Shown: piece by piece, positions 32,095-61,665 of the stretch
Layout: each line of letters opens with the position of its first letter
Numbering within the stretch: the first letter of the stretch is position 1
NCBI RefSeq assembly: GCF_000143415.4
Contig: NW_003314453.1
Coordinates: 20,902 to 84,901 of the forward strand
Reading direction: 5' to 3'
DNA: 64,000 nt
DNA from: Selaginella moellendorffii
Lineage: Eukaryota; Plantae; Lycopodiophyta
Program-made: the position numbers and the translations under genes
The notes under the pieces: model-generated
The model's database searches: none
The model's input: the letters and a program-made list of their open reading frames with translations, nothing else
Told to the model about the DNA's origin: nothing

Positions 32095-34005
32095 TGTGAG
32101 ACACAAATCCCTAAGCCCCAAAGTGGAATAGAAAGGGTGCCACATGGTAATGGTCAAAGTGGAAGTCCAATAAATGTAACATGTTTTGACTAAAGGCTCC
32201 GACTTCAAAAGTCAAGAGTGGGAGTGGAATTTCAAATGAATTGCTTAAGGGATGAGCATGTAGCAATGACCAAGGATATAGTTGTGTGATGAGGAAGTTT
32301 TAAACGTCAATAGAACTTAGTGGTCAGGCCTTTGAGCCCAGACCTAGTGGTGGTGTTGGCAAGCACTGCTAGGGACAAAGAAGGATTTGGTGGGGTCTAA
32401 AGAAAGGATATTTGGGAAGGGTGTTACCTATGTCTCCGAGTATCTTAAGGATGCTAAAGTGTGGTCATAGGATGACCACTCATGAACGGATGATTTAGTC
32501 TTTAGGTGATGGGACTGTGGTGTAGGTGGTCTTGGACTATTTGTGTGATAAAGGGGAATGAACATAGCCTTAGCATAACAGGCAAATATGTTGATAGTAC
32601 CTTTGGGTGCCTATTGTGGGATCAAGCACATAAAGCACTTAGACCAAATGCTATGGCAAAGTGGCATAGAGGCCATTCACAAGGCTAGTAAGTCCTTAAG
32701 TCGGGAATAGGGCTTATGGAGGTTATAAGCGAGACACCTCCAAGTGGTTGAAGGTATGGTTAAGTGACTAAAGTAAAATGGAAAATTTAGTCACTTACAA
32801 TTTAGTATCTGAGTTGTTCCTTACTCCAACTTTTATTGGTGGTCGAGTATTTCACTAGTTGTATTGGCATCAGAAAGTCCGGGCCTATCCTCGAGGAGTA
32901 GCATGTAGAGATGGCATAACTCTCCACTTTAATTTATATGTGAATATATAGGCAATATGATGGGGTTAATAAGGGAATAACTTTAGGATTTTGGGAATAG
33001 TATAAGGTTTTCCTTAAAGAGTTGAGGATGTGATCCAAATGAGCATTTGACTTAGTAAACTTGTTAACATGGTTGTGATAAACAACTATAGTTAGGATTA
33101 TAGGGATGAAGACTTTAAGACTATAAAGGAGTTATAGGATTATCCTCATATAGTTGAGGATGGTGCTTATTTGAGACAAGAATAAGAATGAATTTGAGAT
33201 GAGAATTAATGATCAAATATAGAAGAGGACATAAATCTTTGAAATGATAGCCAAGGTTATATTTAATAAATGCTGGAACAACCCAAGGAGTTAGGAGGTG
33301 TGCTTAGAGGATGAATTGGTATTTTCATCATATAAATAGATAGTCCTAAAGGGCAAAGGTAGTCTATATGGAATAAAGAATAATCAAGTGTTGGAGTAAA
33401 ACTTGCAAAGATGGTCTTTGTGAGTAAGACATGAATATAAAAAGTGGTATTCTAGCGAGCTAGCACCTCAAAAGTAGTCATAAGGCTAAGACTTTACGAG
33501 TCATCAAATTTGCAAAGTTCAAAAGCTAGATGACTCAAGTGGAGTCAAGAGTGTGATGACCCAAATAATGATGTAACTATGAAAATATTAATAATGAGTT
33601 GTAAGACTTGATAACTATGAGACAACTAAGTAAAAGATGCAACATAATTGACTGGATTGGTAAAAGTTAACTCCCCAAAACTTATTATTAGGATAAAGAG
33701 GTTAAATATATCCCTTGGGGGGATAAATTGTTTATGTTATCATATAATAAGTCAATGTTGTAAAGGAAAATACTTATTGTTAAAGAAAGCTATCATTGGG
33801 ACACCTAAATATTTTAAAACACCAAGAAGTGGTGTTTGGTAACATGAGAGCATTAGATAAGGCCCAAGGGACTAAATCTTTAGCGAATAATAGATAGTAG
33901 GTGCTATCTAATAGAAGTCCATCTATCTGAATTGGACAAAACCAAAAGGGATTTTGACAAGGCTAGTGAAAGGGATATAAAAGCCCATGAGTAGCAATAT
34001 TAATC

Positions 34006-34994
34006 TGTAAGCAACCAAAGGGAACGACTTAAGAGATGGTCCATAAGGTTCAAATATAGAGGGAAAGGGCCCATGAACAAGAGTGCACCCCCTTTTCCAA
34101 ACGGTTAAGGGTCTTGGGATACTTGGGGTTAAACGTCCTTGGGTTAGAATAGTACTGAGTTGGGTGACCTCCCGGGAAGTCCAAACTCAAAAGCTTACAT
34201 TTGGTATCGGAGCGGTCTTAGGTCCGACTCTATTGGTTGGCTAGGATAATCACACCACATGTTGATTAACATCTGGCTGGTCCAGTTTGCTCCCGCTGGG
34301 CTCGACTCGAGGGGTAGGGTGTCAAGAGAGCAGGGCTCTCGGGAGAGTTGTGGCTCTCAGCTTCCATTCACGAGGGCGTGAACTTGCAGGGAAGCGTGGT
34401 AGATTGTAAGCAACCAAAGGGAACGACTTGAGAAACGGTCCATAAGGTTCAAATATAGAGGGAAAGGGCCCATGAACAAGAGTGCACCCCCTTTTCCAAA
34501 CGGTTAAGGGTCTTGGGATACTTGGGGTTAAACGTCCTTGGGTTAGAATAGTACTGGGCTGGGTGACCTCTCGGGAAGTCCAAACTCAAGAGCTTACATT
34601 TGGTATCAGAGCGGTCTCGGGTCCGACTCTGTTGGTTGGCTAGGATAATCACACCACATGTTGATTGACATCTGGCTGGTCCAGTTTGCTCCCGCTGGGC
34701 TCGACTCGAGGGGTAGGGTGTCAAGAGAGCGGGGCTCTCGGGAGAGTTGCGGCTTTCAGCTTCCGTTCACGAGGGTGTGAACTTGCAGGGAAGCGTGGTG
34801 GATTGTAAGTAACCAAAGGGAACAACTTGAGAGACGGTCTATGAGGTTCAAAAGAGGGAAAGGGCCCATGAACAAGAGTGCACCCCTTTTTCCAAATGGT
34901 TAAGGGTCTTGGGATACTTGGGGTTAAACGTCCTTGGGTTAGAATAGTGCTGGGTTGGGTGACCTCCCGGGAAGTCCAAACTCAGGAGCTTACA
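34006..34994 (+). mobile_element. Cassandra TRIM, tandem LTR-int-LTR-int-LTR array
   Basis: LTRs 34006-34199, 34405-34598 and 34804-34994 (TGTAAG...CTTACA), period 399 bp. Met-i PBS TGGTATCRGAGC after LTR1 and LTR2; purine-rich GGGAAGCGTGGTGGAT before LTRs; TSD TAATC on both sides; 5S rRNA-like segment in each LTR. Confidence 0.95.
34127..34182 (+). promoter_or_regulatory. 5S rRNA-derived internal Pol III promoter region (A box, IE, C box) in the Cassandra LTR
   Basis: GGTTAAACGTCCTTGGGTTAGAATAGTACTGAGTTGGGTGACCTCCCGGGAAGTCC compared with plant 5S AGTTAAGCGTGCTTGGGCGAGAGTAGTACTAGGATGGGTGACCTCCTGGGAAGTCC. Confidence 0.9.
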
Positions 34995-37900
34995 TAATCC
35001 TAGTATGTGGGATACAAGGTGAGCATATCCAGATTTAGGAACCACTCCCTAGATTATCAAGTTCTTCATCCTTGAGAATACTTGCTAAAGTATGATAAAA
35101 AGTATCCTCCTAATTTGGAGGAGAGCAACCAAAGGAAACGTATGAGGCCAAAAGAAACTAGTAAAGGGTTAGAACCAAAATATAATAATCAAAGGGTATA
35201 ACCGAGAGTGGTTATGAAAGTTGGGAGTGGAGAATCAAGTGGGTGCTCAAAGGTATTGCTACTAGCAATCATGATGTTATAGAGAGTCTAAAGCATGGAA
35301 TTATCCATGTTAAATTATATAGCAATAAAAAAGCTTGTGAAAGGAGAGACATTAACAAGCTAAGGGATAAATCCCTTTCATATTCCCAAAGACAATTTTA
35401 GGTAGGTTGACACCTAGAAAAACAAATGTAAATGATTCATGGGATTAGGTGAAATTAAAGTGGCACAACAGAAGTAAGGTCTTAAAGCTTGCCATAGGTG
35501 AGGCTATCANNNNNNNNNNNNNNNNNNNNNNNNNNNNNNNNNNNNNNNNNNNNNNNNNNNNNNNNNNNNNNNNNNNNNNNNNNNNNNNNNNNNNNNNNNN
35601 NNNNNNNNNNNNNNNNNNNNNNNNNNNNNNNNNNNNNNNNNNNNNNNNNNNNNNNNNNNNNNNNNNNNNNNNNNNNNNNNNNNNNNNNNNNNNNNNNNNN
35701 NNNNNNNNNNNNNNNNNNNNNNNNNNNNNNNNNNNNNNNNNNNNNNNNNNNNNNNNNNNNNNNNNNNNNNNNNNNNNNNNNNNNNNNNNNNNNNNNNNNN
35801 NNNNNNNNNNNNNNNNNNNNNNNNNNNNNNNNNNNNNNNNNNNNNNNNNNNNNNNNNNNNNNNNNNNNNNNNNNNNNNNNNNNNNNNNNNNNNNNNNNNN
35901 NNNNNNNNNNNNNNNNNNNNNNNNNNNNNNNNNNNNNNNNNNNNNNNNNNNNNNNNNNNNNNNNNNNNNNNNNNNNNNNNNNNNNNNNNNNNNNNNNNNN
36001 NNNNNNNNNNNNNNNNNNNNNNNNNNNNNNNNNNNNNNNNNNNNNNNNNNNNNNNNNNNNNNNNNNNNNNNNNNNNNNNNNNNNNNNNNNNNNNNNNNNN
36101 NNNNNNNNNNNNNNNNNNNNNNNNNNNNNNNNNNNNNNNNNNNNNNNNNNNNNNNNNNNNNNNNNNNNNNNNNNNNNNNNNNNNNNNNNNNNNNNNNNNN
36201 NNNNNNNNNNNNNNNNNNNNNNNNNNNNNNNNNNNNNNNNNNNNNNNNNNNNNNNNNNNNNNNNNNNAGATGGACCGAGACGGAGTCTGAGATGGAGTCT
36301 GAGATGGACCGAGACGGAGTCCGAGATGGAGTCCCAGATGGACCCGAGATGGAGTCCGAGATGGAGTCCGAAGTGGAGTCCGAGATGGACCGAGACGGAG
36401 TCCGAGATGGACCCGAGATGGAATCCGAAATGAAGTCCGAGAAGGACCCGAGATGAAGTCCGAGGTCGAGACCAAGACCGGGACCAAGATCGAGACCGAG
36501 ACCGAGACCAAGACCGAGACCGAGACCGGGACCGAGACCGAGACCGAGACCGGGACCGAGACTGAGACCGAGACCGGGACCGAGACCGAGACCGAGGCAG
36601 AGGCCAAGAGCGAGCCCGAGTCCGAGTCCGAGTCCGAGTCCAAGTCCGAGTCCGAGTCCGAGTCTGAGTTCGAGTCTAAGAGGGTGAAAGCCCAAAGCGT
36701 TCGTCTCCCAGACCCTGGGGGGTTTGGTGAGCTCCAAAAGTATAGTAAGGGGGAGGACTATAGTGGAGCCAGTTTGGCCAGGAAAGGCCAGTTTGGCCCA
36801 GGAAGGCCAGACCCAATGTTGGGTGATGAACTGACCATTGGGAAGTCCAAGACTAGAGTGAATACGGACCGACAAGCGGGGTAGCTTGGTGAAGTGTTCA
36901 AGAGCCGGCTCTAGTTCCCCCGGGAGATCGATTGGCCGATGCTCCCAGTCCAAGTGTGGGTGGCACTACCTACTTGGATACCAAGCGTGGCTCAATGGAA
37001 CCTCGCTCTAACTCCATGGCTAGAGCACCCAAGGGCGGAAGGTAGGGAAAGTACCTAGGTGGCTCGCGTAAGGCCACAGTGTTCCGAAATGTCGTCCCAA
37101 AGGCCCAGACTATGGAAAGGAAGAGGAGCAGTCCTCTGGGGTGTGACCAAGGACATGGTCGTGTGGTGATGAAGTCAAAAAGGGACTTAGTGGGGATTGA
37201 CAGAGGGATATTGGGGAAGGCTATTCCCTTTGTCGGTGGGCATCCTAAGGATGCTAAGGAGTGGATCTGGGATGACCACTTATGGATGGTTGGCCCAGTC
37301 TTGGAGAGACAAGATTGTGTTGCAAGTGGTATTAGACTACCAGTGCAGCAAAGGTGATTGGGCATGGCCTTAGCATAACAGGCTGCTATTTCGGTGGTAC
37401 CTTTGAGTGTCGGTCATGGGATCGGACACATGGAGCACTTGGACCAGGTGCAAGGGTTGAGTGGCATGGATGCCATTCTTGGGGCTAGCAAGTCCCAAGT
37501 CCTGAATTGGACTTATGGAGGTTGTGAATGAGACTCCTCCAAATGGTCAGAGGTGTGGTGAAGTGACTAATGTAGAATGGAAAAATTAGTCGCTTACAAC
37601 TTGGTATCGGAGCTGTTCCTTTGTCCGACTTTTATTGGTGCTCAAGTATATCACCATTGATGTTGGCATCGGAAGGTCCTAGGAGTGGGCTTATCCTTGA
37701 GGAGTAGCATGTCGAGAGGACATGGCTCTCCACTCAAGTTCATGCGTGAACTTCGGCACAATGTGGTGGATAAAAAAGGGGCCAATAATGGAACGACTTT
37801 GGGATCTTGGGAACAGTATAAGGTTTCCTCAGAGAGCTGAGGATGTGATCCAAATGAGTGTTTGACGCAACAAACGGGCTAACGTAGTTGTGATAAACAA

Positions 37901-45175: not shown

Positions 45176-48100
45176 TGACACGAACCACAGGAATATTCGG
45201 AGAATATTCCATGGCCTGTGGGATTTAAGGCCGTTGGGAGGTTGGCCTAGGGTTCGCTCTCTTGTTCGTTTCATTGGTATCGGAGTAGCATGTTCTTTTG
45301 GGGATGGCGGGTGAGCAAGACATTGATCCTGATGAGTATGGCATTAGTGATGATAGCCATGACGATGCAGAAGAGACTCTTGATGATGTCATTGTGCGGC
45401 AAGGATGCCAGATTTCTAAGGTTCAGAGTGACATAAAGGAGGTTAAGGATTCTGTCAATCTCATTAAGGATTTCTTGCTTCGCATGAACCCTCAAGGGTT
45501 GAATCAATCTCATATCCGTGATTACCATTGGTACGTCAAGCATGCCAAGGATTATGGTATCGTGGAATGGAAATCATCACCGGATGTTTGTGATAGTCAA
45601 GAGGTTGATTCTTGGTTGGAATTGTGGGAAAGTTGTTGGTCTCACAATCCTTGTGAGGATAAGGTGAAGATAGATTTCTTTGTGACGAAGCTTACGGGCC
45701 ATGCTTCTTCATGGTGGAAGAACTACATCAAAGCTAATCTGAAGCCAACTTCTTGAACTGATTTGACAAAGGTTTTCCGCACTTCGTTTGTCAAGAAGTT
45801 TGAAGAAGTTGATCTTGTGAATCAGTTGTTAAAGATTCGGTAGGGGACTTTGTCTTTGGATGCGTATGCCTGCAAGTTCCGTGATCTTTGCCTTAGTCTC
45901 ACAAGCACCTATAATGAGCTGCTAAAGGTGCAATGTTTCATCAAAGGATTGAGCTCGGTGGATGTGTAGTAGAAGGTCAAGAAGGATTTTCTAGCAACAT
46001 TGACTGATGCTATCACTAAGGCTCAAATCTTTTCTCCCAAACCGTCGGTCAACTCAGTCAACACTGGTCAAAAGGATGGTCTTCGGGGTGGTCAATGTGA
46101 TGACCAACCCACCAATACTTCATCTTCAAGGAAGAAACGGCCATTGTTTCATCATAGCTCGAAGAGTGGAGATGGCAATGAGGCAAAAAGACATCGGTTA
46201 GACCAACGAGAGAAGGACAAGGTGGAGGGCAATTGTTTTCGTTGTCACAAGGCTAGACATCATGGCAAGGATTGTCCTCTTATGAAGGGATCAAAGAATG
46301 TTAAGGTGAATGTGGTGGAATCCATCGTGGATACAGCTTAGGCATCTGCTGTGGTGGCTCTTCCACACCCTGTGGCAAAAATTCAAGAATCTAAGTCTCG
46401 AGTTCATATTAACTCTATAGAGATTAATGGTTCTATGCGCAATCAACTAGTGAAGGCCAAGGGGGACATTCAAGGACATGCTGTTAGTATTCTTTTCAAT
46501 CCAGGTGCTACACACAACTTTTTGAGCTCCAAGGTGGTGAAGAAACTTGGTTTGCCTGTGGAAAAGAGTTCAGTAATTTATGAGGTGGTTATGGCAGATG
46601 GACATAGCACTCGTGTTTATGGTGAATGGGCTCCGAGTGTTCCTTTGACGGTTCAGGGGATTCTCGACCATCCTTCGTTCCAGGTTATGGATCTTGGTCG
46701 CGCAGACGTTATTCTTGGGAAGGAATGGTTTTATGACAGGAAGCCAGGGATCGATTGGGAGCGTAATGTTCTACGTATCGAAGTTGGTGGCACTATAAAA
46801 GAGATTTTCGGGACAGACAATAGTGATACTCCATTGATTAACGCTTTGGAGTTGGTAACATGCTCGCATGAGATAGCTAGGTCTTTTGTGGTGTACCCGT
46901 TTCTTTCTAATTTGATCATGACTGATTTGGAGTATGTTTGTGAGCATGAGGCACAGGTGGATTCCATTCAGGAGGAGTTCTGTGACGTATTTCCGAATGA
47001 GTTACTTGTTGGTTTGCCTCCAGAACGTGGAATTCAGCATGAGATTGACTTGGTTCCTGGAGCTACTCCTTTTCAGCGACAACCGACTCATACTAGTCCC
47101 GCTGAAGATGAGGAGATTAATAGGCAGTTTGCTGAATACCTTCAGAAAGGGTGATTACGGATCAGCAAGTCTCCTTGGGCTGCTCTAGTGGTGATGGTAA
47201 AAAAGAAAGATGGTACATGGCGTCTTTGCATAAACTACAAGCAATTGAATGATAAGACAGTGAAGAATATGTTCCCGATCCCTCGTATTGATGATTTGCT
47301 TGATCATCTTCGTGGTGCTCGATATTTTTCGAAGATTGATTTAAGGCAAGGATATCATTAGATTTGTGTCAAGCCAGAGGATGTTCCGAAAACTGCATTT
47401 CGGACAAGGACAGGTCACTACGAGTTTTTAGTGATGCCATTTGGTTTGACAAATGCTCCTGCAACTTTTCAGAGATTGATGAATCAAGTTCTACAACCTT
47501 ACTTGGGAAAGTTTGCAATTGATTATTTTGATGATATCCTAGTATTCAGCTCTTCCGTGGAGGAATATAAGATGCATGTGCAAAGTGTTTTACAACTTTT
47601 GAGGGATAAGAAGCTCTACTTCAAGTTATCCAAGTGCAAGTTTTTTTTAGAGGAGATTGGATATCTCGGGCATTTGATTTCGGTACATGGAGTGAGCTGA
47701 TCCCGCAAAGATTCAAGCCGTGGTTGATTGGCCTATACCTTCAATAGTGCATGTTCTCCATAGTTTCCTTGGTATGGCTGGAGTTTTTTGACGATTTGTG
47801 AAGGACTTTTCAGGGATAGCAACCCCTTTAACTGATCTTCTCCAGAATACGTCAAAACATGCTACTATTCATGGTTGGGATGAGAAGGGTGAAGTGGCAT
47901 TTCAACGTTTGAAGCAGTGTTGTATCTCTGCTCCGGTGTTGAAGATTTTTGATCCTAAAAAGCCTCTTGTGGTCGAGACAGATGCAAGTGACATTGCTAT
48001 TGGAGCTGTATTGCTTCAAGTTGGGCATCCTCTTGCGTACATGAGCCATAAGTTTGATGCCACACAGCGGAATTGGCCTACTCGAGACAAGGAGTTGTAT

Positions 48101-50193
48101 GCTGTGATTGCTGCTGTGAAGGAATGGCAACATTATCTATATGGATCGGACTTCCATGTGGATTCAGACCATCAATCTCTCCAATATTTCAGTCGACAAA
48201 AGGATCTTCGAGGCCGTCTTGCTCGTTGGCAAGAGTTCCTGCAAGAAATGTCTGTTAAGATCCAGTACAAGCATGGAGGTGACAATAAGGTGGCTGATGC
48301 GTTATCCAGGATGGTAAATTCTATCTCGTTTGTGAAGCTATCCAGCGATCTCTTGGATGAGCTTAAGGAGTTTGCTAACTTTGACTCCTTCATCACTAAT
48401 ATTCACACGAAAGTTTTGTTAAGGGACGCCTCTATGGATTTGAAGGGTGACAAGTTTGCATCATTTGAAATACGAGATGGAATTCTGGTGAAGAAGGGAT
48501 GTGTAGTAGTTCCTCGTGTTGACAAACACATCAAACGGATTTTGGTTGAGTGTCATAATGTGCCAAGTGCTGGGCATTCAGGGGTATTGAGAACGTATAT
48601 GTTGGTGAAGAGGCATTTCTTTTGGCCTGGGATGAAGTCAGATGTTGAGAAGTATGTATATGGTTGTTTGACCTGCTAGGCGGTCAAAGTTGATCATCAG
48701 AAGCTCACTAGCCTCTATCATCCTTTACGTCTACCCGAGAATAAATGGGATAGCATCTCGATAGACTTTATCACTGGTTTGCCCAAAACCTTTCGAGGAA
48801 ATGATGCTATTTAGGTTGTTGTGGATCATTTGACGAAGATGGCTCACTTCTTCCTTGTGAAGACAACGATAAAAGCTTCTGAACTTGCTCAGTTGTTTGT
48901 AGACCGATTATTCAGTCTCTATGGTTTGCCAGGTGACATTGTGAGTGATCGGGATCCTAAGTTCACATCCAAGTTTTGGCAAATGGTCTTTGAAAAACTA
49001 GAGACTAAACTGAGCATGAGTAGTGGTGAGCATCCACAATCTGATGGGCAGACAGAGCGCATGAATCAGCAATTAGAGGATATGCTACAGTCTTTTGTGG
49101 GAAACTTGACTCGACAGGGAGTATGGGAGAGATACTTGCCTTTGCTTCAGTTTGCTCACAATAGCGCTCATCAATCAGCTATTGGCATGTCTCCTTTTAT
49201 GGCGATGTATGGCTATGAGCCTAGGTCTCTTGTGAGTTTGAATTTGGCTTTGGTTCAGGTTCCTCATGCTTGTGATTTCCTGGAGGATATGCAAGACAAG
49301 GTTGAGTTGGCAAAATTGAATATGAGGCAAGCTCAAGAACGAGACAAAAGATTGGCTGATGAGCATCGTCGTCATCAAGAGTACAAAGTTGGTGACAAGG
49401 TTTTCCTTAAGCTGTCGAATACACAACCGTCTCTAAAAGGAGGTGGCAGTGCTAAGTTGTCTCCATAGTATTGTGGGCCTTGGACAATTTTACAGCGTGT
49501 GGGGGATCTTGCATACACTTTGGACTTGCCAGTTAGTTCGAAGATTCATCCAACGTTCCATGTGAGCAAGCTTAAAGCGTGTTTGCACTCTGGTGATATT
49601 GTGGATCAGTCCATCATCCAGGTTCTAGAAATTGATGCAGAGAAGGCTGGTCCGGCCAATATTCTTACTCAAAGATTGGTAAAAATATGCTGGAAAACAA
49701 CTAAGGAGTTGTTAATTCAATGGAATGGTTATTCCATGGATGAAGCTACATGGGAAACTGAGGATGATGTGAAAAGAGTGTTTCCGAGTTTTGGTTATGA
49801 CTTGGATGACATTCCTGAGGAAGGGGAGAATTGAGTTCTATAACCGTATTGCTATATGATTTGAGCCATTTGTTCTATTCTCATTCTCTTGTTTCCATGA
49901 TCGTATTGTCATGTGAGAAAGCCGTATTGCTTTCTTTCTTTCGTGGCCGTTTGTCGCGACGTTGGTGTTGCCGTTTGCACATCTTTTCTCCATGGCCGTA
50001 TTGCCCTGGACTTCCTTCATGTGAGGCTCGTTTAGCTTCTTGAAGATGCCGTATGTGGCTGGGTCATGAGGGAGGGGAGAATGACACGAACTATGGGAAT
50101 ATTCCAAGAATATTCCATGGCCTGTGGGATTTAAGGCCGTAACGCCTTAAGGGTTGGGAGGTTGGCCTAGGGTTTGCTCTCTTGTTCGTTTCA
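45176..50193 (+). mobile_element. Complete Ty3/Gypsy chromovirus (5018 bp) with very short LTRs
   Basis: LTRs 45176-45273 (98 bp) and 50082-50193 (112 bp), TG...CA. TSD CAAAT/CAAAT. PBS TGGTATCGGAG at 45275; PPT GAGGGAGGGGAGAA at 50068-50081. Confidence 0.95.
45304..49834 (+). pseudogene. gag-pol polyprotein (gag, zinc knuckle, protease, RT, RNase H, integrase, chromodomain), inactivated
   Basis: CFRCHKARHHGKDC; LFNPGATHNF; MPFGLTNAPATFQ..YFDDILVFS; ETDASDIAIGAVL; HSGVLRT..CLTC; SDRDPKFTSKFW..HPQSDGQTER; YCGPW; ELLIQWNGYSMDEATWE. About 10 stops and one frameshift near 47698. Confidence 0.95.
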
Positions 50194-50282: not shown

Positions 50283-50477
50283 TGTAAGCTCTTGAATTTA
50301 GACTTCCCAGAAGGTCACCCAGCCTATTACTATTCAAACCCAAAGACGTTTAACCCCAAATATCCTAAAACCTTTAACCAATTGGAAAAGAGGCTGCACT
50401 CTTGTTCATGTGCCCTTTCCTTCTATATTTGAACCCCTATGAATTGTTTTTCGAGTTGTTCCCTTTGGTTGCTTACA
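50283..50477 (-). mobile_element. Cassandra solo LTR
   Basis: TGTAAG...GCTTACA, 195 bp, with TSD CACAA at 50278-50282 and 50478-50482. Confidence 0.92.
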
Positions 50478-51277: not shown

Positions 51278-52980
51278 ACATTGGTAGTCCAACACCACCT
51301 ATATCACAGTCCCATCTCCCAAAGACTGGGCCATTTGTCCATGAGTGATTATTCTAAATCCACTCTTTAGCATCCTTAGGATACCCATAAATATAGGGAA
51401 CAACCTTCCCTAATATCCCTTTTTCAGTCTCCACCAAGTCCCTTTCCATCCACAACTGTGTTCACCAACACTTCCATTGAGTTAAGGCTCAAAGGCCCAA
51501 CCACTACATCCTATTGACCTCTAGGACTTCCTTGCCACATGCCTACATCCTTGGTCACCACATAAAAGAATTGCTCCTCTTCCTTTCTATAGTCTGGGAC
51601 TTTAGGATAATATTTTGAAATATTGTGGCCCTCAGTGAGCATCGTGGGTATTCTCCCCATCTTCTGCCTTTGGGTGCCCTAGCCATATGGCTAGAGTGAA
51701 GTTTCAATGAGCCACACCAGGTATCCAAGTAGGTAGTGCCACCCACACTTAGACTAGAAGTATCGACCATTTCGATCTCTCAAGGGAGCTAGAGCTTAAA
51801 CACTTCACCAAGCTACTCTACTTGTTTGTCTATAATCATTCTAACCTTGGACTCTTTAGTAAATATATCATCACCCAACACATGGGTATAGCCTTCCTTG
51901 GTCATACTAGCCTTTCCTAGCCAAATTGGCTCCACTAAAGTCTTCCCTTTACTATACTTTTAGAGCTCACCAAACCCCCTAGGGTCTGGGAGACGAACAG
52001 TTTGGGCTTTCACCCTCAAACTCAGGCTTGGACTCAGACTCAGACTTGAATTTGAACTTGGACTCAGACTTGGACTCAGACTTGGACTCAAACTCGGACT
52101 TGGTCTTAGTCTTAGACTCGGTCTTGAACTCGGCCTCAGACTTAGACTCGGTCTTGGTCTTGGTCTCGGTCTTGGCCTCAGCCTCAACCTCAAACTCCAT
52201 CTCGGGTGCATCTCGGACTCCATCTTGGACTCCATTTCAGGTCCATATTGGGTCCATTTTGAGTCCATATCAAACTCTATCTTGGACTCCTTCTCAGACT
52301 CTTTTTCGGACTCATTCTTGACACTTTCATGTGTCACGACACTTGCCATGTGTTAGTCCTTCTTTTGTCCCTTTTTTAGTGACTCATTCACCAATTGCTT
52401 CATACTCATCTCTCAAGCACTTTGTTTAGAGTTCCACTCCCACCCTTGACTTTCCAAGTCAGAGTTTTTGGTCCAAACATATTACGTTTATTGGACTTCT
52501 ACTTTGGCCACTACCATGTGGCACCCTTTTCTGCTCCACTTTGGAGCTTAAGATTTTTGTTTCACAACTCCACCACCTATAAACAAAGTTCGATGTCCTC
52601 ATCAAACGATAAACCATTTTATAAAGTAACCCCATCATGGATTACCATTTTTCGCTCTAATTTTTTGCTCTTATCCTTTGATTATTGCACCAAATAACAT
52701 AAGATCACTACTTCCATCCTTGAGGTATCCTTTTGGTTTCATGGCAAAGGCTTTTCTTTGCTAAGTTTAGAGGGTGTTCATTCCTAGTAAGTCTTTTTAG
52801 CATTTCTTGCTATAGACTCTATCCACAGCCCAACTTTATGACCTTCCTATAAGTGTTTTCTAGAGACTATCTTCTTGGACTCATTATGCTATCACATTGA
52901 CACAGCTCATTTCTTTTAGGTGTCCTTCCCATTTCGTTATCTTGGCCAAGTCACACCATTACTAACAGTTTAAATCAATA
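51278..52980 (-). mobile_element. Family L 3' LTR (to 52566), PPT and deleted internal region; old copy
   Basis: Colinear with 53470-55770 with deletions; ACTCCACCACC follows ...TTTCACA. Confidence 0.85.
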
Positions 52981-54223
52981 ACTAAACATGCATATAACAA
53001 TATTACCAGATGGTGCAATCCAACTAATCCTACACATGTTGCTTCAGATCAGAAAAGTCTCTGCATATGCAACTTGAGTCAAAAATTCTGACAAAAGTTG
53101 GATAGGAATCACTGAGACAATTCCTCTGATACCGAATGTATTGCACCTAAATTTGGAGCCAAACCCCAAGCCCATTGCTCTATGAAATGAGGGTCCGATA
53201 CAATCCCACGAGCACCAGTGTAAGCGACTAATTTTTCCATTCTACTTTAGTCACTTAACCACACCTTCGACCACTTGGAGGAGTCTCACTCACAACCTCC
53301 TTAAGTCCAATTCAGGACTTGGGACTTGCTAGCCCCAAGAATGGCATCCATGCCACTCAACACTTGCACCTGGTCCAAGTGCTCCATGTGTCCGGTCCCA
53401 AGACCGACACCCAAAGGTACCACTGACATCTCGGCCCGTTATGCTAAGGCCATGCCCATTCACCTTTGCTGCACTAGTGGTCCAATACCACTTGCATCAC
53501 CATCCCGTCTCTCCAAGACTGGGCTATCGGTCCACGAGTGGTCATCCTAGATCCACTCCTTAGCATCCTTAGGATGCCCACAGACCTGGGGAATCGCCTT
53601 CCCCAAAGTCCCTTTGTCAATTCCTACCAAGTCCCTTTTTGCCCCTGGCCGTGTTTGCCAACACTGCCACTGGATCGAGGCCCACAGGCCCGACCACTAA
53701 GTCCCATGGTCCTCTGGGACTTCCTCACCACACGACTGTGTCCTTGGTCACTACCCCAGAGGACTGCTCCCCTTCCTTTCCACAATCTAGGCCTTTGGGA
53801 CAACATTTCGGAACACCGTGGCCTTACGCGAGCCACCTGGGTACTCTCCCCGCCTTTCGCCTTTAGGTGCTCTAGCCATGGGCTTAGAGCGAGGTTCCGT
53901 TGAGCCACACCTGGTATCCAAGTAGGTAGTGCCACCCACACTTGGACTGGGAGCATCGGCCAGTCGATCTCCCGGGGGAACTAGAGCCGGCTCTTGAACA
54001 CTTCACCAAGCTACCCCGCTTGTCGGTCCGTGTTCACTCTAGTCTTGGACTTCCCAGTGGGCATCTCATCACCCAACACTGGGTCCGGCCTTCCTGGGCC
54101 AAACTGGCCTTTCCTGGCCAAACTGGCTCCACTGCAGTCCTCCCCCTACTATACTTTTGGAGCTCACCAAACCCCCCAGGGTCTGGGAGACGAACGCTTT
54201 GGGCTTTCACCCTCTCAGGCTCC

Positions 54224-54516
54224 GGACTCGGACTCGGACTCGGACTCGGACTCGGACTCGGACTCGGGCTCGGGCTCGGTCTCGGGCTCGGCCTCGGTCT
54301 CGGTCTCGGTCCCGATCTCGGTCTCGGTCTCGGTCTCGGTCCCGGTCTCGGTCTCGACTTCGGACTCCATCTCGGACTCCATCTCGGACTCCATCTCGGA
54401 CTCCATCTCGGGTCCATCTCGGGTCCATCTCGGACTCCATCTCGAACTCCATCTCGGGTCCATCTCGGACTCCATCTCGGACTCCATCTCGGACTCCATC
54501 TCTAGTCCATCTCGGA
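54224..54516. repeat. LTR-internal satellite: (GGACTC)n, (GGTCTC)n, then GGACTCCATCTC/GGGTCCATCTC units
   Basis: Read directly. Homologous arrays at 26030-26505, 36268-36680, 41000-41330, 52020-52320 and 59808-60378. Confidence 0.95.
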
Positions 54517-56599
54517 CACTCCCATGTGTCATGTGTTGGTCCTTTTGGGTCTCTTTTTGGAGCCTTGCCTTTTGCTCGCTTCGTGCTCGTTCCTCGAGCA
54601 CTTCGTTGGGAGTTCCACTCCCGCTCTTGACTTTTCAAGTCGGAGCTTTTGGTCCAAACGTGTTACGCTCGTTTGGCTCTCGCTTCGGCCACTACCATGT
54701 GGCGCCCTTCCGGCTCCACTTTGGGGCCTAGGGATTTTGTGTCTCACAACTCCACCACCCATAGACGAAGTTCGATGTCCTCATCGAACGGTAAACCCTT
54801 TCATAAAGTAACACCCACATGTGTTACCATTTCCATCTTTGGCACCTAGCCAATCTTTGTCTATGGTTTGACATCAAAGGCTCACCATGCCTTTTGCATA
54901 TCCTCTAAGGAGGGTAGTCTCTCCAACTTAGAGACTGATTGGACCACGTATAGTGGTTCTCTCCTTTTATTGGTTTCTTTTTCTTTTTTCCTAAACCTCT
55001 TAGAGACCTTTCTCTAAGTCAATCCCACTACTCCTTCTCGAGTAGTTTCAATTTCCATCGCTATAACCTTTGCACTTTGGAACTTTGAATTTTTACTTCT
55101 TGGAGTCGATTTCCTAGGTGTCTCCGACACCTTGCCTTGCACCTTTTGTGCAACTCCACTTCCCATCCTAGGAAGTTCTCTACTCGAGGGCACCATCATC
55201 CTCTCTTCTATTTCGTGCCAAAGTTCCAGTTATCATGCTTTGTGCTAGGGCTGTTCATGGCCCTATCATTTGGCTACCTTACCGCTCCCTCCCTTGGAGC
55301 TTCCACTTTTGCCAAATTGGAGCATTTCGGAATCCCTCCTTGGAAACACACTTCCTTTCCCGCAACTCGTTAGCGTCCAACACATTAGTGTTCCTCGCCT
55401 AACTTTGTCACTTGGATTCCTTCCAATGGATTCCACGGCCCTATCTTGGCCACTCATCTTTTGCTCCTATCCGTTGATTGTTGCACCAAGCAACATCGAA
55501 TCTCTACCTCCCTCCTTGAGGTATTGTTTCTTTTCCATAGCAAAGACTCTTCTTTGCCAAGTCCGGAGGATGTTCACCCCTAGTACGTCTCTTTAGCATC
55601 TTCTGCTATGGGCTCTATCCACGGCCCAACTTCGTGACCCTCCCATGGGTCTTTTATAGAGACTACTTTCCTCGGACTCACTATGCTATCGCACGGACAT
55701 AGTTTAATTCCCTTAGGTGCTCTTCCCACTTGGTTATCACGACCAAGCCACACCACCTTAAACAGTTCAATTTCAACATTTTGAACCAGGAACTTCATTC
55801 CTTAGCCAACCAAGGACCATGTCCTTATCTGGCCATAAGATCACCTAGTGATCTCACCTTGGCACCTTAACAGAGTTGCCAAGAGGTACTTGGTCTTCTA
55901 GACCTCCAAGTTGTTGACTATAACCCCGGGGGCATCCCCCACACTTGGCGGTGCACCCAAGCTAGCCCTTACGGCCAAGGGTTCATAGCAACTGAGATTA
56001 GGTGTCCCCATCTCACTCACCACGACCTTGGTGCCACTTGCACCAAAGTGTTCAAGTTAGATATGCTGAGCTTTCACACTAAGCAATCTAACCGTGCATC
56101 ACGACTCCGAGGCATCCCTCGCTTGGCGGTGTGCCCAAACCAGTCTCCCCACTGAGAGTCCATGACCACCGAAATATGAGTGTCCTCATATTCCAAACCA
56201 TCACCACGCCCTAGTGATTTGGGACTCGAACCCAAGCACTAGAGGGTCGGGACTCGAACCCAACCTCCGTATATGCATCTACGGACGGCATCACACTAGA
56301 TGCCTGGCGTGACTCCCCACGCCGGTGCACCAACCTATTTTTAAAGCGCGCTACAGATCACAGCTTAGGAACCTAGTTCCTCCACACTGCCAAGTCCTCT
56401 CACTTGACATGTCTATGATCATGCATGGACTCCTCCATGCTCGGCCCCATGGCCCACCCCTTTTGAAGTTATCACCTTCAACTAGGGTCTTTGTTCCCCC
56501 GACGTGCCAATTTCACTTGGCAAGTCCTCCGACCATTGTAACATGGTTCCTGCATAAGCGTGAAAGTCCTTGACCATCGACTTTCGTTCAAAGCCCTCT

Positions 56600-58625
56600 C
56601 TTTGAACACTCGGGAACTACTTCCCTAACCTTGATAACCTTGCCTCATGGCAAGCTTCAAGACCACGCTTCTGCTGCGCCACTCTGATTTCGCGTGTTCC
56701 ATGAACCATTTACACTTGGCCTTTCTAGGTACTACGCTACCTAGAATCGTCTTTGGGAACCTTGAAGGAACTCTGTCCCTCAGCTTGCTAAGGCCTCCCC
56801 TTTCGCAAGCTTTATAGTTGCCATATAGTCTAACATGGACAATTCCATATTTTAGACTCTCCATGGCATCACGGTTGCTAGCAACAACATCCTCGAGCAC
56901 CCTCTTGCTTCTCCACTCCCAACTTTCATAACCACTGTTGGATATGTCCTTTGATTTCTATGGTTCAGTTCCATCCCAATACTACTTGCCTTTGGCTTCA
57001 CACCTTTCCTTCGGTCATTCTCCTCCAGACCAGGAGGATAGCTTTGCACTTTCTATCATGCCTTAGCAAGTATTCTTAGGGATGAACCTACCCAATAGCC
57101 CAGGGAGTGGTTCCTCAATCCGGGTATGCTCAGCTTATAATCCCACACACTGGGATTACATTTGTTGCTTATGGGCCGTTACATGCCCATCACTAGCCTT
57201 GCCAAAATTCCATTTTTGGCTTTGTCCAACTTGGGTAGACAGTCCTCTCCTGTCTCCGCAACCTTGGACATTTGGATAGCACCTTCTATCCATCATTCGC
57301 TAGGGACTTAGTCCCTTGGGCTTTATCCATTGCCCTCGCGATATCAAACACCACCTTCTGGTGTTCTAGAGTGTTCGGGTGTCCCAATGATGGCTTTCTT
57401 GACAATGAGTATTTCCTTTTATGACATTGACTTACTATATCGCAACATAAGAAACTTATCCCCCGTAAGGGTATATCCGACTTCCCTATACTAGAAGTCT
57501 TGGGTAGCTACCTTCTACCCGTTTAATCAGTTATTTTGCACCTCTTGCTTAGTTGCCTCATAGTTGTCAAGTCCTACAACTCATTGCTTGGTGCTTTCAC
57601 ACCTCCATCACTATCTGGGTCACCACACTCCAACTGCATGCTCTGCAGCTTAGGCTATGCCATTCCTATTTCCATTGGGATTCCTTTGGCAAGGGGTTCT
57701 CATGAACCCACCAACATAGCCTCAAGGTATCACACCTTGGCACATTTGGTGTCTCCACACCATCGGCTCCACGAGCCTACCTCTATGACATTTCCCCTTC
57801 GTGTCTAAGTCTTTGCCAAGACCAACACCGCTCTTTCTCATGCCAACCATCCGTTAGCACTGCACCATAGAGGTCACACACAACTTTATGTCAAAGTTGT
57901 TTTCTTCTGGGAACACCTTTCCCATAACTTTAGCATGGCACATTGCCATCGATGAGATACTCTCTGTTCTCATCCTTGGATCCTATGATCCCCCCCCATC
58001 CTTTGTGGGGTACAACGCACCTCAGTCCAAATGCTTCTATCCGTCCTTTTAGGACCATCCCTTGACTCTACTTGAGTCGTCTAGCAGTTTTGGACTTGGT
58101 TAATCCACCAACCCGTAAGGTCTTACTTGTGAGGCACTAGCTCACTGGAATACACTTCTTGCATTCCGGTCCTACTCAAAAGGACTATTTTCACAAGTGT
58201 TACTCCGACACTTGATTTTGTTCTCTGGGGGCAACCTTTGCCCCTTAGGACTGCTTGTCCATGTGATGAGAATACCAACTCATCCACTTAATACACCCCC
58301 AACTCCTTGGGTTGTTCCAGCATTTATTAGAGGTAGCCCCGGCTACCATTTCAAGGACTTGAGTCCTCTTCCGTATTTGACCTTCCACGGTCATTACCTT
58401 TGGTCTCACATTCATGAGCACCAACCTCAACTATATGAGGATAATCTTGTGACTCCTTTATTGTTTTGGAGTCTCTATCTTTCCCGTGATCCCAACTTTA
58501 GTTGTTTACCACAACAACCTAAGCCAATTTGCTGAGACAAATGCTCATCCGGATCACATCCTCAACTCAATGAGGAAAACCTTGCACTGTTCCCAAGATC
58601 CCAAAGTCGTTCCATTATTGGCCCT
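56600..58625 (+). pseudogene. Heavily decayed Ty1/Copia gag-protease-integrase relic, antisense to family L
   Basis: Ordered, frame-broken remnants: SW(x)SFKTTLL (gag), EWFLNPG (WxLDSG protease), DLLYRNIRNLS, CQSCFLLG..PFP, LD..LWG, FWTWLIH, GHYL..IHEH, PQQ..AE..HILNSMRKTLHCSQDPK. The order and spacing fit Copia. Confidence 0.55.
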
Positions 58626-59807
58626 TTTCTATCCACCACTCGTCTACAAGTTCACACATGAATTGTAATGGAGAGCCATGTCTTCCAGACTTGCTACTCC
58701 TCAAGGATAGGCCCACTCCTCGGACCTTCCGATGCCAACACTAGTGGTGATATACTTGAGCACCAATAAAAGTCGGACTAAGGAACAGCTCTGATACCAA
58801 ATTGTAAGCGACTAATTTTTCCATTCTACTTTAGTCACTTAACCACACCTTCGACCACTTGGAGGAGTCTCACTCACAACCTCCTTAAGTCCAATTCAGG
58901 ACTTGGGACTTGCTAGCCCCAAGAATGGCATCCATGCCACTCAACACTTGCACCTGGTCCAAGTGCTCCATGTGTCCGGTCCCAAGACCGACACCCAAAG
59001 GTACCACTGACATCTCGGCCCGTTACGCTAAGGCCATGCCCATTCACCTTTGCTGCACTAGTGGTCCAATACCACTTGCATCACCATCCCGTCTCTCCAA
59101 GATTGGGCTATCGGTCCACGAGTGGTCATCCTAGATCCACTCCTTAGCATCCTTAGGATGCCCACAGACCTGGGGAATCGCCTTCCCCAAAGTCCCTTTG
59201 TCAATTCCTACCAAGTCCCTTTTTGCCCCTGGCCGTGTTTGCCAACACTGCCACTGGATCGAGGCCCACAGGCCCGACCACTAAGTCCCATGGTCCTCTG
59301 GGACTTCCTCACCACACGACTGTGTCCTTGGTCACTACCCCAGAGGACTGCTCCCCTTCCTTTCCACAATCTAGGCCTTTGGGACAACATTTCGGAACAC
59401 CGTGGCCTTACGCGAGCCACCTGGGTACTCTCCCCGCCTTTCGCCTTTAGGTGCTCTAGCCATGGGCTTAGAGCGAGGTTCCGTTGAGCCACACTTGGTA
59501 TCCAAGTAGGTAGTGCCACCCACACTTGGACTGGGAGCATCGGCCAGTCGATCTCCCGGGGGAACTAGAGCCGGCTCTTGAACACTTCACCAAGCTACCC
59601 CGCTTGTCGGTCCATGTTCACTCTAGTCTTGGACTTCCCAGTGGGCATCTCATCACCCAACACTGGGTCCGGCCTTCCTGGGCCAAACTGGCCTTTCCTG
59701 GCCAAACTGGCTCCACTGCAGTCCTCCCCCTACTATACTTTTGGAGCTCACCAAACCCCCCAGGGTCTGGGAGACGAACGCTTTGGGCTTTCACCCTCTC
59801 AGGCTCC

Positions 59808-60378
59808 GGACTCGGACTCGGACTCGGACTCGGACTCGGACTCGGACTCGGGCTCGGGCTCGGTCTCAGGCTCGGCCTCGGTCTCGGTCTCGGTCCCGAT
59901 CTCGGTCTCGGTCTCGGTCTCGGTCCCGGTCTCGGTCTCGACTTCGGACTCCATCTCGGACTCCATCTCGGACTCCATCTCGGACTCCATCTCGGGTCCA
60001 TCTCGGGTCCATCTCGGACTCCATCTCGAACTCCATCTCGGGTCCATCTCGGACTCCATCTCGGACTCCATTTCGGGTCCATCTCGGGTCCACCTCGGAC
60101 TCCACCTCGGACTCCATCTCGGACTCCATCTCAGGTCCATCTCGGACTCCACTTCGGACTCCAGCTCGGGTCCATCTCGGGTCCACCTCAGACTCCATCT
60201 CGGACTCCACTTCGGACTCCAACTCGGGTCCATCTCGGGTCCACCTCGGACTCCACTTCGGACTCCAGCTCGGGTCCATCTCGGGTCCACCTCGGACTCC
60301 ATCTCAGACTCCATCTCGGACTCCATCTCGGGTCCATCTCGGACTCCATCTCGGACTCCATCTCTAGTCCATCTCGGA
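59808..60378. repeat. Expanded satellite in the 5' LTR
   Basis: 278 bp longer than the array in the sister LTR; the LTR offset shifts from 5584 to 5862 across it. Confidence 0.95.
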
Positions 60379-60619
60379 CACTCCCATGTGTCATGTGTTG
60401 GTCCTTTTGGGTCTCTTTTTGGAGCCTTGCCTTTTGCTCGCTTCGTGCTCGTTCCTCGAGCACTTCGTTGGGAGTTCCACTCCCGCTCTTGACTTTTCAA
60501 GTCGGAGCTTTTGGTCCAAACGTGTTACGCTCGTTTGGCTCTCGCTTCGGCCACTACCATGTGGCGCCCTTCCGGCTCCACTTTGGGGCCTAGGGATTTT
60601 GTGTCTCACAACCAGCTCC

Positions 60620-61665
60620 CTGATCTCACCTAAACACCTTAACAGATTTGCCAAGGAATCTTATTCTTTAACCAAACAAAAACCTTGTCCTTATTTAGCC
60701 ACACTTAGTGATCTCACCTTGACACCTTAACAGATTTGCCAATAGATACTAAATCTTCCAGATTTTTAAGTTGTTGACCATGACCTTGGGGGCATCCCCC
60801 AGGGTCATGTAATCTCCTGAGTTTGGACTTCTTGGGAGGTCACCTATCCCAGTACTATTCACACTCAAGGATGCTTAACCCCAAATATCCTAAGACCCTT
60901 AACCGATTGGAAAAGGGGGTGCACTTTTATTCATGAGCCTTTTCCCTCTATATTTAAACCCCATAGATCGTCTCTTAAGTCGTTCCCTTTGGTTGCTTAC
61001 ACCACACTTGTCAGTGCGCACAAGCTAGCCCTTCTAAGCAAGGGTCCATAGCAATTAAGATTGGGTGTCCCCATCTCATTCACTACATCTTTGGTGCCAT
61101 TTACACCAAAGTATTCAAGTTAAATATGTTAAGCTTTCACACTAAAAAATTTAACATGCATCATGACTCTAGGGCATCCCTCACTTGGTGGTGTGCCCAA
61201 GCCAATCTCCTCACTGAGAGTCCATAACCACCATAAAATAAGTGTTCTTATATTCCAAACTATCACCACACCCTAGTGAGTTGGGATTTGAACACAAACA
61301 CTAGAGGGTTGGGACTTGAACCCAACCTTCGTATATGCATTTATAGATAGCATCATATTTGGCGTGACTCCTCATGCCGGTCCACCAACTTATACTTAAA
61401 ACACGCTATAGATCATAGTTTAGTAACATAGTTCCTTTGAACTACCAAGTCTTCTCACTTGACAAGTCTATGATTATGCATGGACTTTTCCATGTTTGGC
61501 CCCATGGGCCACCCTTTTTTGAAGTCAACACATTCAATTAAGATTTTTATTCCCCCCAACTTGCCAATCTCGCTTAGCAAGTCACCCGACTAGCATAACA
61601 TAGTTTCGTGTGTAAGCGTGAAAGTCCTTAACCACTGACTTTCATTCAAAGCCATCGCTTGAACA
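60620..61665 (-). mobile_element. Old family L internal fragment
   Basis: Colinear with 55790-56615. Confidence 0.8.
60808..61001 (-). mobile_element. Cassandra solo LTR
   Basis: TGTAATCTCC...GGTTGCTTACA, 194 bp, with the 5S-like segment; no clean 5-bp TSD. Confidence 0.9.

What the first reader, a model, noticed from the sequence alone, without database searches (positions are those of the whole stretch)
58631..58802. A 7.4-kb non-coding LTR element carries a complete Cassandra-like internal domain right after its PBS
Seen: the ~170 nt after the family L PBS (also at 37599-37771 and, decayed, at 32800-32965) align end to end with the 205-nt Cassandra internal domain (34599-34803). Colinear anchors are TGGTATCRGAGC, GTCCGACT, TTGGT, CACCA, CATC, GGTCC, TGGGC, GAGGRGTAG, GGCTCTC, a TTCA..TGAAC stem-loop and the PPT-like GTGGTGGAT. 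Both families' LTRs also end in GCTTACA, and their PPTs are similar. Established: Cassandra is a non-autonomous TRIM that depends on proteins supplied in trans. Inference: family L is a giant relative of Cassandra that kept the priming/packaging module but has unrelated, 5S-free LTRs and about 4 kb of cargo. The two would then parasitise the same helper through a shared RNA module.
Basis: partly seen in the sequence, partly recalled or inferred. Interest (0 to 1): 0.85.

Follow-up and report, generated by a model that had tools for sequence, protein, structure and literature searches.

The report
Cassandra interior reused in a LARD
In the spikemoss Selaginella moellendorffii, a 7.4-kb gene-less retrotransposon and a tiny 5S-carrying "Cassandra-like" retrotransposon share one diverged stretch of about 170 bases running from the primer site to the second-strand primer site, so the two parasites are related and probably depend on the same still-unknown helper.

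Summary
The 172 nt after the PBS of element L (58631-58802, minus strand) align end to end with the 205-nt interior of the 5S-bearing TRIM (34599-34803). Identity is 62% overall and 58% without the PBS (z = 10.4; 0 of 1000 dinucleotide shuffles reach the score).

L is a complete, young LARD: 7,392 bp, TSD CTGGT, LTRs about 99% alike, and no coding signal. The two families also share LTR tips (TGTRAG...GCTTACA) and an unusual GTGGTGGA primer tract. Their LTR bodies are unrelated, and L has no 5S.

The stretch is not generic to Met-primed elements. Two tRNA-iMet-primed chromovirus families from the same genome lack it.

Three points are new here:
- L carries the terminal hairpin plus GTGGTGGA tract twice, once at the end of the shared stretch and once at its working PPT, flanking about 3.9 kb of cargo.
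- The homology probably continues about 30 nt into what is Cassandra's LTR start.
- Comparative support for five helices is modest.

Neither a packaging function nor a shared helper is shown, and no helper was found. Within L the stretch is no better conserved than its flanks, and its folding energies are unremarkable. The scan already noted this homology on other DNA of this genome (s1-395610).

The parts
53219..60610 (-). Element L copy 1: a complete non-coding LTR retrotransposon (LARD), 7,392 bp, flanked by the TSD CTGGT (60611-60615 and 53214-53218)
   Evidence: LTR pair 99.15% identical, termini, TSD; no coding signal
58803..60610 (-). L 5' LTR (TGTGAG...GCTTACA), 1,808 nt, containing a 12-nt tandem repeat block
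58788..58799 (-). L primer-binding site TGGTATCAGAGC, preceded by the spacer ATT (58800-58802)
   Evidence: complementary to the tRNA-iMet 3' end as printed in PMC5846777
58631..58802 (-). The shared stretch (the finding): homologous end to end to the Cassandra-like interior
58631..58663 (-). Copy 1 of the terminal hairpin (TTCA..TGAA) plus the GTGGTGGAT tract, at the end of the shared stretch. This is not L's working PPT
58599..58630 (-). About 30 nt that probably match the first 30 nt of the Cassandra LTR (shared GGAACGACTT), with TGTAAG changed to AGAAAA
   Evidence: anchored test p 0.003-0.05; the unanchored test was not significant
54749..54789 (-). Copy 2 of the hairpin (GTTCGATG..CATCGAAC) plus the working PPT GGGTGGTGGAGT, abutting the 3' LTR
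   Evidence: z 3.2 against the Cassandra interior end; no null window reaches it
53219..54748 (-). L 3' LTR, 1,530 nt
34006..34994 (+). Cassandra-like 5S TRIM in the arrangement LTR-interior-LTR-interior-LTR, with TSD TAATC. It is inserted in the interior of old L copy 3
34200..34404 (+). Cassandra-like interior 1 (PBS TGGTATCGGAGC ... GTGGTAGAT)
34599..34803 (+). Cassandra-like interior 2 (PBS TGGTATCAGAGC ... GTGGTGGAT)
37599..37771 (+). The shared stretch in L copy 2 (87% identical to copy 1)
32800..32966 (+). The shared stretch in old L copy 3 (78% identical to copy 1)
45176..50193 (+). Negative control: a broken chromovirus with LTRs of about 100 nt (TGACAC..GTTTCA), TSD CAAAT, PBS TGGTATCGGAG and gag starting 20 nt later. 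It lacks the shared stretch
52974..53213 (-). Negative control: a fragment of chromovirus M (LTR end, PBS-like CGGTATCAGAGG at 53123-53134, then leader) with an unrelated leader. It lies embedded in the older L copy that hosts L1

Best explanation
L (a LARD) and the Selaginella 5S-bearing TRIM carry two diverged copies of one ancestral cis-acting stretch. In order it consists of:
- the LTR tip GCTTACA;
- a 2-3 nt spacer;
- the tRNA-iMet primer-binding site;
- about 150 nt of leader;
- a small hairpin;
- the unusual primer tract GTGGTGGA;
- an LTR start TGTRAG.

The LTR bodies around this stretch were exchanged or replaced: 5S-derived in the TRIM, and 1.5-1.8 kb with a TATA-like block in L.

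In the TRIM the stretch is the whole interior. In L about 3.9 kb of non-coding cargo sits between two copies of the stretch's last 35-45 nt (hairpin plus GTGGTGGA). A deletion or a reverse-transcriptase jump between those two repeats would turn an L-like element into a TRIM-like one, and the reverse event would go the other way.

Shown: the homology, its specificity, the shared tips and primer tract, and the duplicated end.

Inferred: the stretch is kept because it holds what the proteins of a helper need (primer placement, second-strand priming, integrase ends, perhaps packaging), so both families depend on one class of helper. That helper should itself have a GTGGTGGA tract and TGTRAG..CTTACA tips.
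For: - Homology without the PBS: z = 10.4, 0 of 1000 shuffles reach the score; reciprocal nhmmer hits.
- A nine-copy alignment from three loci is colinear, with only four Cassandra-specific insertions.
- A covariance model built from both families scores all nine training copies at 101-124 bits, as expected by construction. Elsewhere in 106 kb nothing scores above 13 bits. The two chromovirus M leaders reach only 11-13 bits through their PBS, and the short-LTR chromovirus is not reported.
- The motifs GGTGGATGTRAG and CTTACA-spacer-PBS occur only in L and Cassandra copies across the sequence held. The two chromoviruses have ordinary polypurine tracts and different tips.
- L's working PPT region is itself homologous to the end of the Cassandra interior, with a hairpin whose inner pairs differ but still pair.
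- Five helices in the first 128 columns: 90.4% of cells are paired against 36-47% when partners are slid, and two pairs flip on both sides between the families.
- Both families look recently mobile: L LTRs are 99% alike and Cassandra LTRs 96-97%.
- Contigs of two runs that are guessed to be RNA, and 6 true RNA reads, cross from the LTR end through the PBS into the stretch.
- Precedent: TRIM interiors that match only the interior ends of a larger element with unrelated LTRs (PMC10886601), and TRIMs derived by deletion between duplicated internal sequences (PMC4717578).
Against: - No autonomous element with the stretch was found, so 'same helper' is untested.
- Among L copies the stretch (78-87% identical) is no better conserved than its neighbours. 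The last 170 nt of the LTR are the best conserved part.
- Folding energies are ordinary (z = -0.9 and -0.6).
- The helices were derived from the same alignment on which they were counted. They rest on essentially one between-family divergence plus decay mutations, so the covariation is weak evidence.
- L1's own minimum-energy fold prefers a different long-range helix that Cassandra keeps poorly.
- The extension into the Cassandra LTR start is only modestly supported.
Confidence: 0.55

Rival explanations
1. Recombinational capture rather than descent. One family acquired the stretch from the other's RNA by reverse-transcriptase template switching at or near the shared PBS and PPT, while both RNAs sat in one particle. 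On this view L's first hairpin-GTGGTGGAT copy, plus the roughly 30 nt that resemble the Cassandra LTR start, would be a relic of a former interior/3'-LTR junction of a TRIM (or of a three-LTR tandem TRIM).
For: - The homology probably runs about 30 nt past GTGGTGGAT into the Cassandra LTR start, with TGTAAG decayed to AGAAAA.
- The hairpin-PPT unit is duplicated in L.
- Three-LTR tandem TRIMs are present here.
- The older L copy that hosts L1 carries a 247-nt piece of chromovirus M (LTR end, PBS, leader) inside its interior. This shows that L-family interiors do pick up pieces of other elements.
- Unchecked earlier notes of this scan report Cassandra-LARD and Cassandra-chromovirus chimeras joined at the PBS.
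Against: - At 58-62% identity the event would be old, and its direction cannot be read.
- The 30-nt extension is weakly supported.
- This rival explains the history, not the present function, and is compatible with a shared helper.
Confidence: 0.25
2. Neutral relic. The two families share ancestry in this region, but the roughly 150 nt between the PBS and the primer tract have no function of their own. Only the PBS, the PPT and the LTR tips matter, and the rest is residual similarity.
For: - There is no conservation peak over the stretch within L.
- Folding energies are ordinary.
- Angiosperm Cassandra interiors are only 69-75 bp long (PMC4079214), so a long interior is not required for a 5S TRIM.
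Against: - About 60% identity persists along the whole length, while the LTR bodies have lost all similarity.
- Paired positions are kept across families at 90%.
- The 18-nt Cassandra-specific insertion falls in the loop of a conserved GAGAG..CTCTC hairpin.
Confidence: 0.15
3. A generic leader of all tRNA-iMet-primed LTR elements of this genome, or similarity by chance.
For: All four families use the same primer, and the PBS itself contributes 12 identical bases.
Against: - The significance holds without the PBS.
- The short-LTR chromovirus (three copies) and chromovirus M (three copies, with a 190-nt leader) show no similarity beyond the PBS.
Confidence: 0.03

Closest known systems
Cassandra TRIMs (5S-carrying terminal-repeat retrotransposons in miniature; Kalendar et al. 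2008, 2020, PMC7215508)
   Same: A unit of under 1 kb, 5S-like sequence in the LTRs, tRNA-iMet PBS, 5-bp TSD and LTR-interior-LTR tandem arrays.
   Different: The 5S match lies just under Rfam's cut-off and lacks model positions of about 21-58. The interior is 205 nt, against 69-75 bp in pear. Orthology with fern and angiosperm Cassandra was not tested.
LARDs (large retrotransposon derivatives, e.g. Sukkula)
   Same: L has long LTRs, a PBS, a PPT, a TSD and a conserved non-coding interior of about 4 kb with no gag-pol trace.
   Different: L begins its interior with a complete TRIM-type interior and carries the hairpin-PPT unit twice. I found no paper describing this in my searches.
Helenus LTR-1_PTrit / Copia-9_PGr and SMART / FRetro64 (TRIM interior matches only the interior ends of a larger element; PMC10886601, PMC3281118)
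   Same: The whole interior of the small element corresponds to the 5' leader plus the PPT end of a larger element, while the LTRs are unrelated.
   Different: There the larger element is autonomous and so is a candidate helper. Here it is itself gene-less, so the pair points to a third, unseen partner.
OsajRetroS10 / OsajLTRA10 in rice (Gao et al. 2016, PMC4717578)
   Same: A duplicated internal sequence flanks the segment whose loss turns the large element into the TRIM. L's two hairpin-GTGGTGGA copies flank its cargo in the same way.
   Different: In rice the LTRs are 97% identical and the large element encodes proteins. Here the LTRs are unrelated and no deletion derivative of L was observed.
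BARE-2/BARE-1 and Dasheng/RIRE2 type partnerships
   Same: A non-autonomous element keeps the cis signals of a helper (named).
   Different: Those pairs share LTRs with a known autonomous partner. No such partner is known here.

Membership tests
Cassandra (5S TRIM) | Small element with two short LTRs and a short non-coding interior | tested here: met
   LTRs of 193-194 nt and an interior of 205 nt; one LTR-interior-LTR unit is about 593 nt
Cassandra (5S TRIM) | 5S rRNA-derived sequence with Pol III promoter boxes in each LTR | tested here: inconclusive
   RF00001 matches in all three LTRs at 31.4-36 bits, against a cut-off of 38 (E 2e-5 to 4e-4). Model positions of about 21-58 are replaced by 6 nt, while the box C region is well kept. 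There is no match at the gathering threshold
Cassandra (5S TRIM) | tRNA-iMet PBS, a PPT and a 5-bp TSD | tested here: met
   TGGTATCAGAGC or TGGTATCGGAGC; GGGAAGCGTGGTGGAT next to the LTR; TSD TAATC
Cassandra (5S TRIM) | Transcription from the 5S Pol III promoter | not testable with these tools
Cassandra (5S TRIM) | Sequence relationship to Cassandra of ferns and seed plants | not tested
   No Cassandra sequence from another plant was available. The PNAS 2008 paper is not held
LARD | Intact LTR retrotransposon structure (LTR pair, PBS, PPT, TSD) | tested here: met
LARD | Large interior without any gag/pol coding capacity, conserved among copies | tested here: met
   - The interior is 4,054 nt and its longest open stretch is 110 aa.
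- Ten open stretches gave no Pfam hit at E<=1.
- tblastx against two chromoviruses gave no hit in L's interior, while the chromovirus-versus-chromovirus control was strongly positive.
- Interiors of other L copies are 73-91% alike
Helper-sharing pair of non-autonomous elements | Same primer, similar LTR tips and primer tract, and a homologous leader | tested here: met
Helper-sharing pair of non-autonomous elements | An autonomous element carrying the same cis signals | tested here: not met
   - The two chromovirus families sampled lack the stretch, the GTGGTGGA tract and the tips.
- Protein-based routes to further Selaginella elements gave nothing.
- Only 106 kb of the genome could be read

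The most novel reading that the evidence does not exclude
The 5S TRIM and LARD L are two size-forms of one non-autonomous lineage. They interconvert by gain or loss of the segment between the two hairpin-GTGGTGGA repeats, and they swap LTR bodies freely. The roughly 170-nt stretch is the complete and sufficient set of cis signals read by a single helper with an unusual non-polypurine primer tract. If so, the helper of Cassandra-type elements, for which the literature has 'no indication' (PMC10886601), could be found simply by searching this genome for gag-pol preceded by the stretch.
Probability: 0.3. Interest if true: 0.7.

Novelty: new variant of a known kind. Interest (0 to 1): 0.45.

Why it matters
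The element that mobilises Cassandra-type TRIMs is unknown. A 2024 survey states that there is no indication of it (PMC10886601). A second, much larger non-autonomous family carrying the same PBS-to-PPT stretch, the same LTR tips and the same odd primer tract gives a concrete sequence signature to search for in autonomous elements. It also gives a minimal RNA to test in packaging or mobilisation assays. The duplicated hairpin-PPT unit offers a simple route by which TRIMs and LARDs could turn into each other. The limits are real: one species, no helper found, and no evidence yet that the stretch is functional.

Tried and rejected
- **Proteins to reach more L copies or an autonomous L.** An ORF in the L LTR found nothing in the protein collection.
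- **Chromovirus M PR-RT as query.** No Selaginella protein appeared among the best 120 hits. The first search gave only two, so the helper search by protein failed.
- **Ghost gag-pol in L.** Pfam on ten open stretches, and tblastn and tblastx against both chromoviruses, gave nothing in the interior.
- **Checking the middle of plant tRNA-iMet in papers.** Only its first 19 and last 19 nt could be confirmed.
- **Thermodynamic stability of the stretch.** Not different from shuffles.
- **A conservation peak over the stretch within L.** Absent.
- **Unanchored local alignment of the L post-stretch sequence with the Cassandra LTR.** Not significant. Only the anchored test is.
- **LTR body similarity between L and Cassandra.** None.
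- **Reads laid on 57600-59750.** Loose ends marked the LTR boundary at 58803 but gave no well-supported second context for the stretch. Depth over the stretch equals that of the L interior, so no abundant further family with an L-like stretch (80% or more) is evident. A rare helper is not excluded.
- **Earlier-findings look-ups by sequence and by helper words.** These gave nothing further.

Full report
**What is there**

The window is a nest of plant LTR retrotransposons. The best protein matches of a chromovirus in it are Selaginella moellendorffii proteins at 80-89% identity, and two loci of that assembly could be fetched.

At 34006-34994 lies a tandem LTR-interior-LTR-interior-LTR element.
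- LTRs are 193-194 nt (TGTAAG...GCTTACA) and interiors 205 nt; the TSD is TAATC.
- Each LTR gives a 5S rRNA match of 31-36 bits. This is just under Rfam's 38-bit threshold, and the match has an internal gap.
- It is therefore a Cassandra-like 5S TRIM. Short three-LTR arrays of this kind are described for Cassandra (PMC7215508).

At 53219-60610 on the minus strand lies element L.
- LTRs run TGTGAG...GCTTACA and the TSD is CTGGT.
- The LTR pair is 99.15% identical apart from the copy number of a 12-nt tandem repeat (1,808 against 1,530 nt).
- The PBS is TGGTATCAGAGC at 58799-58788, and the primer tract GGGTGGTGGAGT abuts the 3' LTR.
- The 4,054-nt interior has no open stretch above 110 aa, no Pfam hit at E<=1 for ten stretches, and no translated similarity to two chromoviruses.
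- L has no 5S or tRNA match at E<=1.
- L is a LARD. Two older copies lie at 36268-42323 and from about 32095, and the latter hosts the Cassandra insertion.

The 172 nt after L's LTR align end to end with the Cassandra interior.
- 105 of 170 columns are identical, or 58% once the PBS is left out.
- Without the PBS the score is 10.4 standard deviations above 1000 dinucleotide shuffles, and none reach it.
- nhmmer finds each family with the other.
- With extra copies from L001 and L002 (two L and two more full Cassandra interiors), nine sequences align colinearly. There are only four Cassandra-specific insertions, of 4, 7, 18 and 4 nt.
- The LTR bodies show no similarity.

**It is specific**

Two other families primed by the same tRNA were available.
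- A broken chromovirus with LTRs of about 100 nt (45176-50193; TGACAC..GTTTCA; purine tract GAGGGAGGGGAGAA) starts gag 20 nt after its PBS.
- Chromovirus M is full length in L002:1-7220. Its LTRs are about 910 nt (TGTCGC..GCTACA), its tract is AAGGGGGGGAGAG, and it encodes gag-PR-RT-RH-INT-chromodomain. It has a 190-nt leader of unrelated sequence.
- A covariance model of the first 119 positions scores all nine L and Cassandra copies (its own training set) at 101-124 bits. The M leaders reach only 11-13 bits (E about 0.5-1, i.e. the PBS alone), and the short-LTR chromovirus is not reported.
- The junction motifs GGTGGATGTRAG and CTTACA-spacer-PBS occur only in L and Cassandra across the 106 kb held.

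**New anatomy**

- L's working PPT region (54789-54749) is also homologous to the end of the Cassandra interior (anchored z 3.2, no null window as high). It folds into a hairpin, GTTCGATG..CATCGAAC. Its outer pairs match Cassandra's GTTCAC..GTGAAC, and its inner pairs differ yet still pair.
- L therefore carries the unit 'hairpin plus GTGGTGGA' twice, at 58663-58631 and at 54789-54749, flanking about 3.9 kb of cargo.
- The 30 nt after the first copy resemble the first 30 nt of the Cassandra LTR. They share GGAACGACTT, and AGAAAA stands where Cassandra has TGTAAG. An anchored test gives p 0.003-0.05 for most copy pairs, but an unanchored test is not significant.
- The first copy therefore looks like a disused interior/LTR junction.
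- A deletion or template jump between the two repeats would yield a TRIM-type interior. Rice OsajRetroS10 is reported to derive from OsajLTRA10 across a duplicated 25-bp internal sequence (PMC4717578).

**Structure**

RNAalifold on the nine copies gives the following:
- a hairpin pairing the 3' half of the PBS with the GTCCGACT anchor;
- a TTGGT..CACCA hairpin;
- a long-range helix GACATC..GTGTC enclosing two small stems;
- a GAGAG..CTCTC hairpin, whose loop holds the 18-nt Cassandra insertion;
- the TTCA..TGAA hairpin.

For the five helices in columns 1-128, 90.4% of cells are paired against 36-47% with slid partners. The covariation score is 0.339 against at most 0.093, and no shuffle reaches it. 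Two pairs flip on both sides between the families.

This is modest evidence. The structure was derived from the same alignment, and there is essentially one deep divergence. Several 'compensatory' changes in decayed copies are G-to-A/C-to-T transitions. Folding energies are ordinary, and L1's own best fold uses a different long helix.

**Function and helper**

- Within L the stretch is not better conserved than its flanks. The last 170 nt of the LTR are the best kept.
- L is very abundant in a DNA run: 78,236 contig pieces were laid.
- Contigs of two runs guessed to be RNA cross the LTR end, the PBS and the stretch nearly without mismatch. A true RNA-seq run gave only 6 reads. Four first mates lie on the + strand and two on the - strand; the + strand ones would fit L-sense RNA in a usual stranded library.
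- No autonomous element with the stretch was found, and protein routes to more Selaginella elements failed.
- The two chromoviruses differ from L and Cassandra in tips and primer tract. This argues against them as helpers, although M is the nearer of the two (GCTACA end, TT spacer).
- Two side observations link L to chromovirus M. Their LTRs share a 70-nt block with a TATA-like motif (E about 1e-9). The older L copy that hosts L1 contains a 247-nt M fragment (LTR end, PBS, leader) inside its interior. This fragment could be a scar of copying between two RNAs, though DNA-level repair could also produce it.

**Comparison with what is known**

- The literature held has no helper for Cassandra (PMC10886601).
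- It does describe TRIMs whose interior matches only the interior ends of a larger element with unrelated LTRs (Helenus/Copia-9_PGr, SMART/FRetro64).
- The present pair is of that kind, except that the larger partner is itself gene-less.
- Earlier notes of this scan had already reported the same Cassandra-LARD homology on other DNA of this genome (s1-395610). They also reported PBS-joined chimeras with LARDs and chromoviruses. I treated them as leads. The homology I re-tested independently; the chimeras I did not see.

**Verdict**

This is a new variant of a known kind and of moderate interest.

Noticed in passing
window 52974-53213 and 60611-60653 (minus strand), around the L1 insertion: The older L-family copy that hosts L1 carries a 247-nt piece of chromovirus M inside its interior: the last ~85 nt of the LTR, the PBS-like CGGTATCAGAGG and ~165 nt of leader. 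A 35-nt local duplication precedes it. This may be a scar of recombination between L and chromovirus RNAs.
   Followed up: partly
window 59728-59796 (and the matching place in the 3' LTR); L002 minus strand, M LTR positions 554-628: The L LTR and the chromovirus M LTR share a 70-nt block (about 73-76% identical, E about 1e-9) ending in CCAAA(A/T)GTATAGTAGGG, a TATA-like motif. The rest of the LTRs is unrelated.
   Followed up: partly
window 34785-34801 (also 34386-34402): The purine-rich tract before the Cassandra LTR (GCAGGGAAGCGTGGTGG) matches nt 12-29 of plant initiator tRNA-Met in the sense orientation, 17 of 18 (z 6.7). L matches less well.
   Followed up: partly
window 58803-60610 versus 53219-54748: The two LTRs of one young element differ by 278 nt in a 12-nt tandem repeat block although they are otherwise 99% identical. 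The repeat number therefore changed during or soon after insertion, or the assembly collapsed it.
   Followed up: no
window 50281-50477, 60807-61002, 30702-30873, 22646-22730, 17087-17345: Further Cassandra-like solo LTRs and fragments, most inside other elements. One interrupts a decayed Gypsy RT/RNase H at 30308-31000. The copy at 17087-17345 keeps half an interior and is strongly AT-shifted.
   Followed up: partly
window 45176-50193; L001 8725-11535; L002 8536-11377: A chromovirus family with LTRs of only about 100 nt and gag starting 20 nt after the PBS. It may be the Gypsy-type partner (SmoLTRA4) that Gao et al. 2016 report for another Selaginella TRIM; this was not checked.
   Followed up: no
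L002 17788-18901 (minus strand): A second Cassandra-like tandem array, with an internally deleted unit, is inserted in the gag-pol of a chromovirus M copy. A full-length M with 96-98% identical LTRs lies at L002:1-7220.
   Followed up: partly
window 56174-56345: An earlier first-stage note calls this part of L's interior a tRNA-like module with Pol III B boxes. ARAGORN found no tRNA in the window, and Rfam at E<=1 found no tRNA or 5S match in L.
   Followed up: partly
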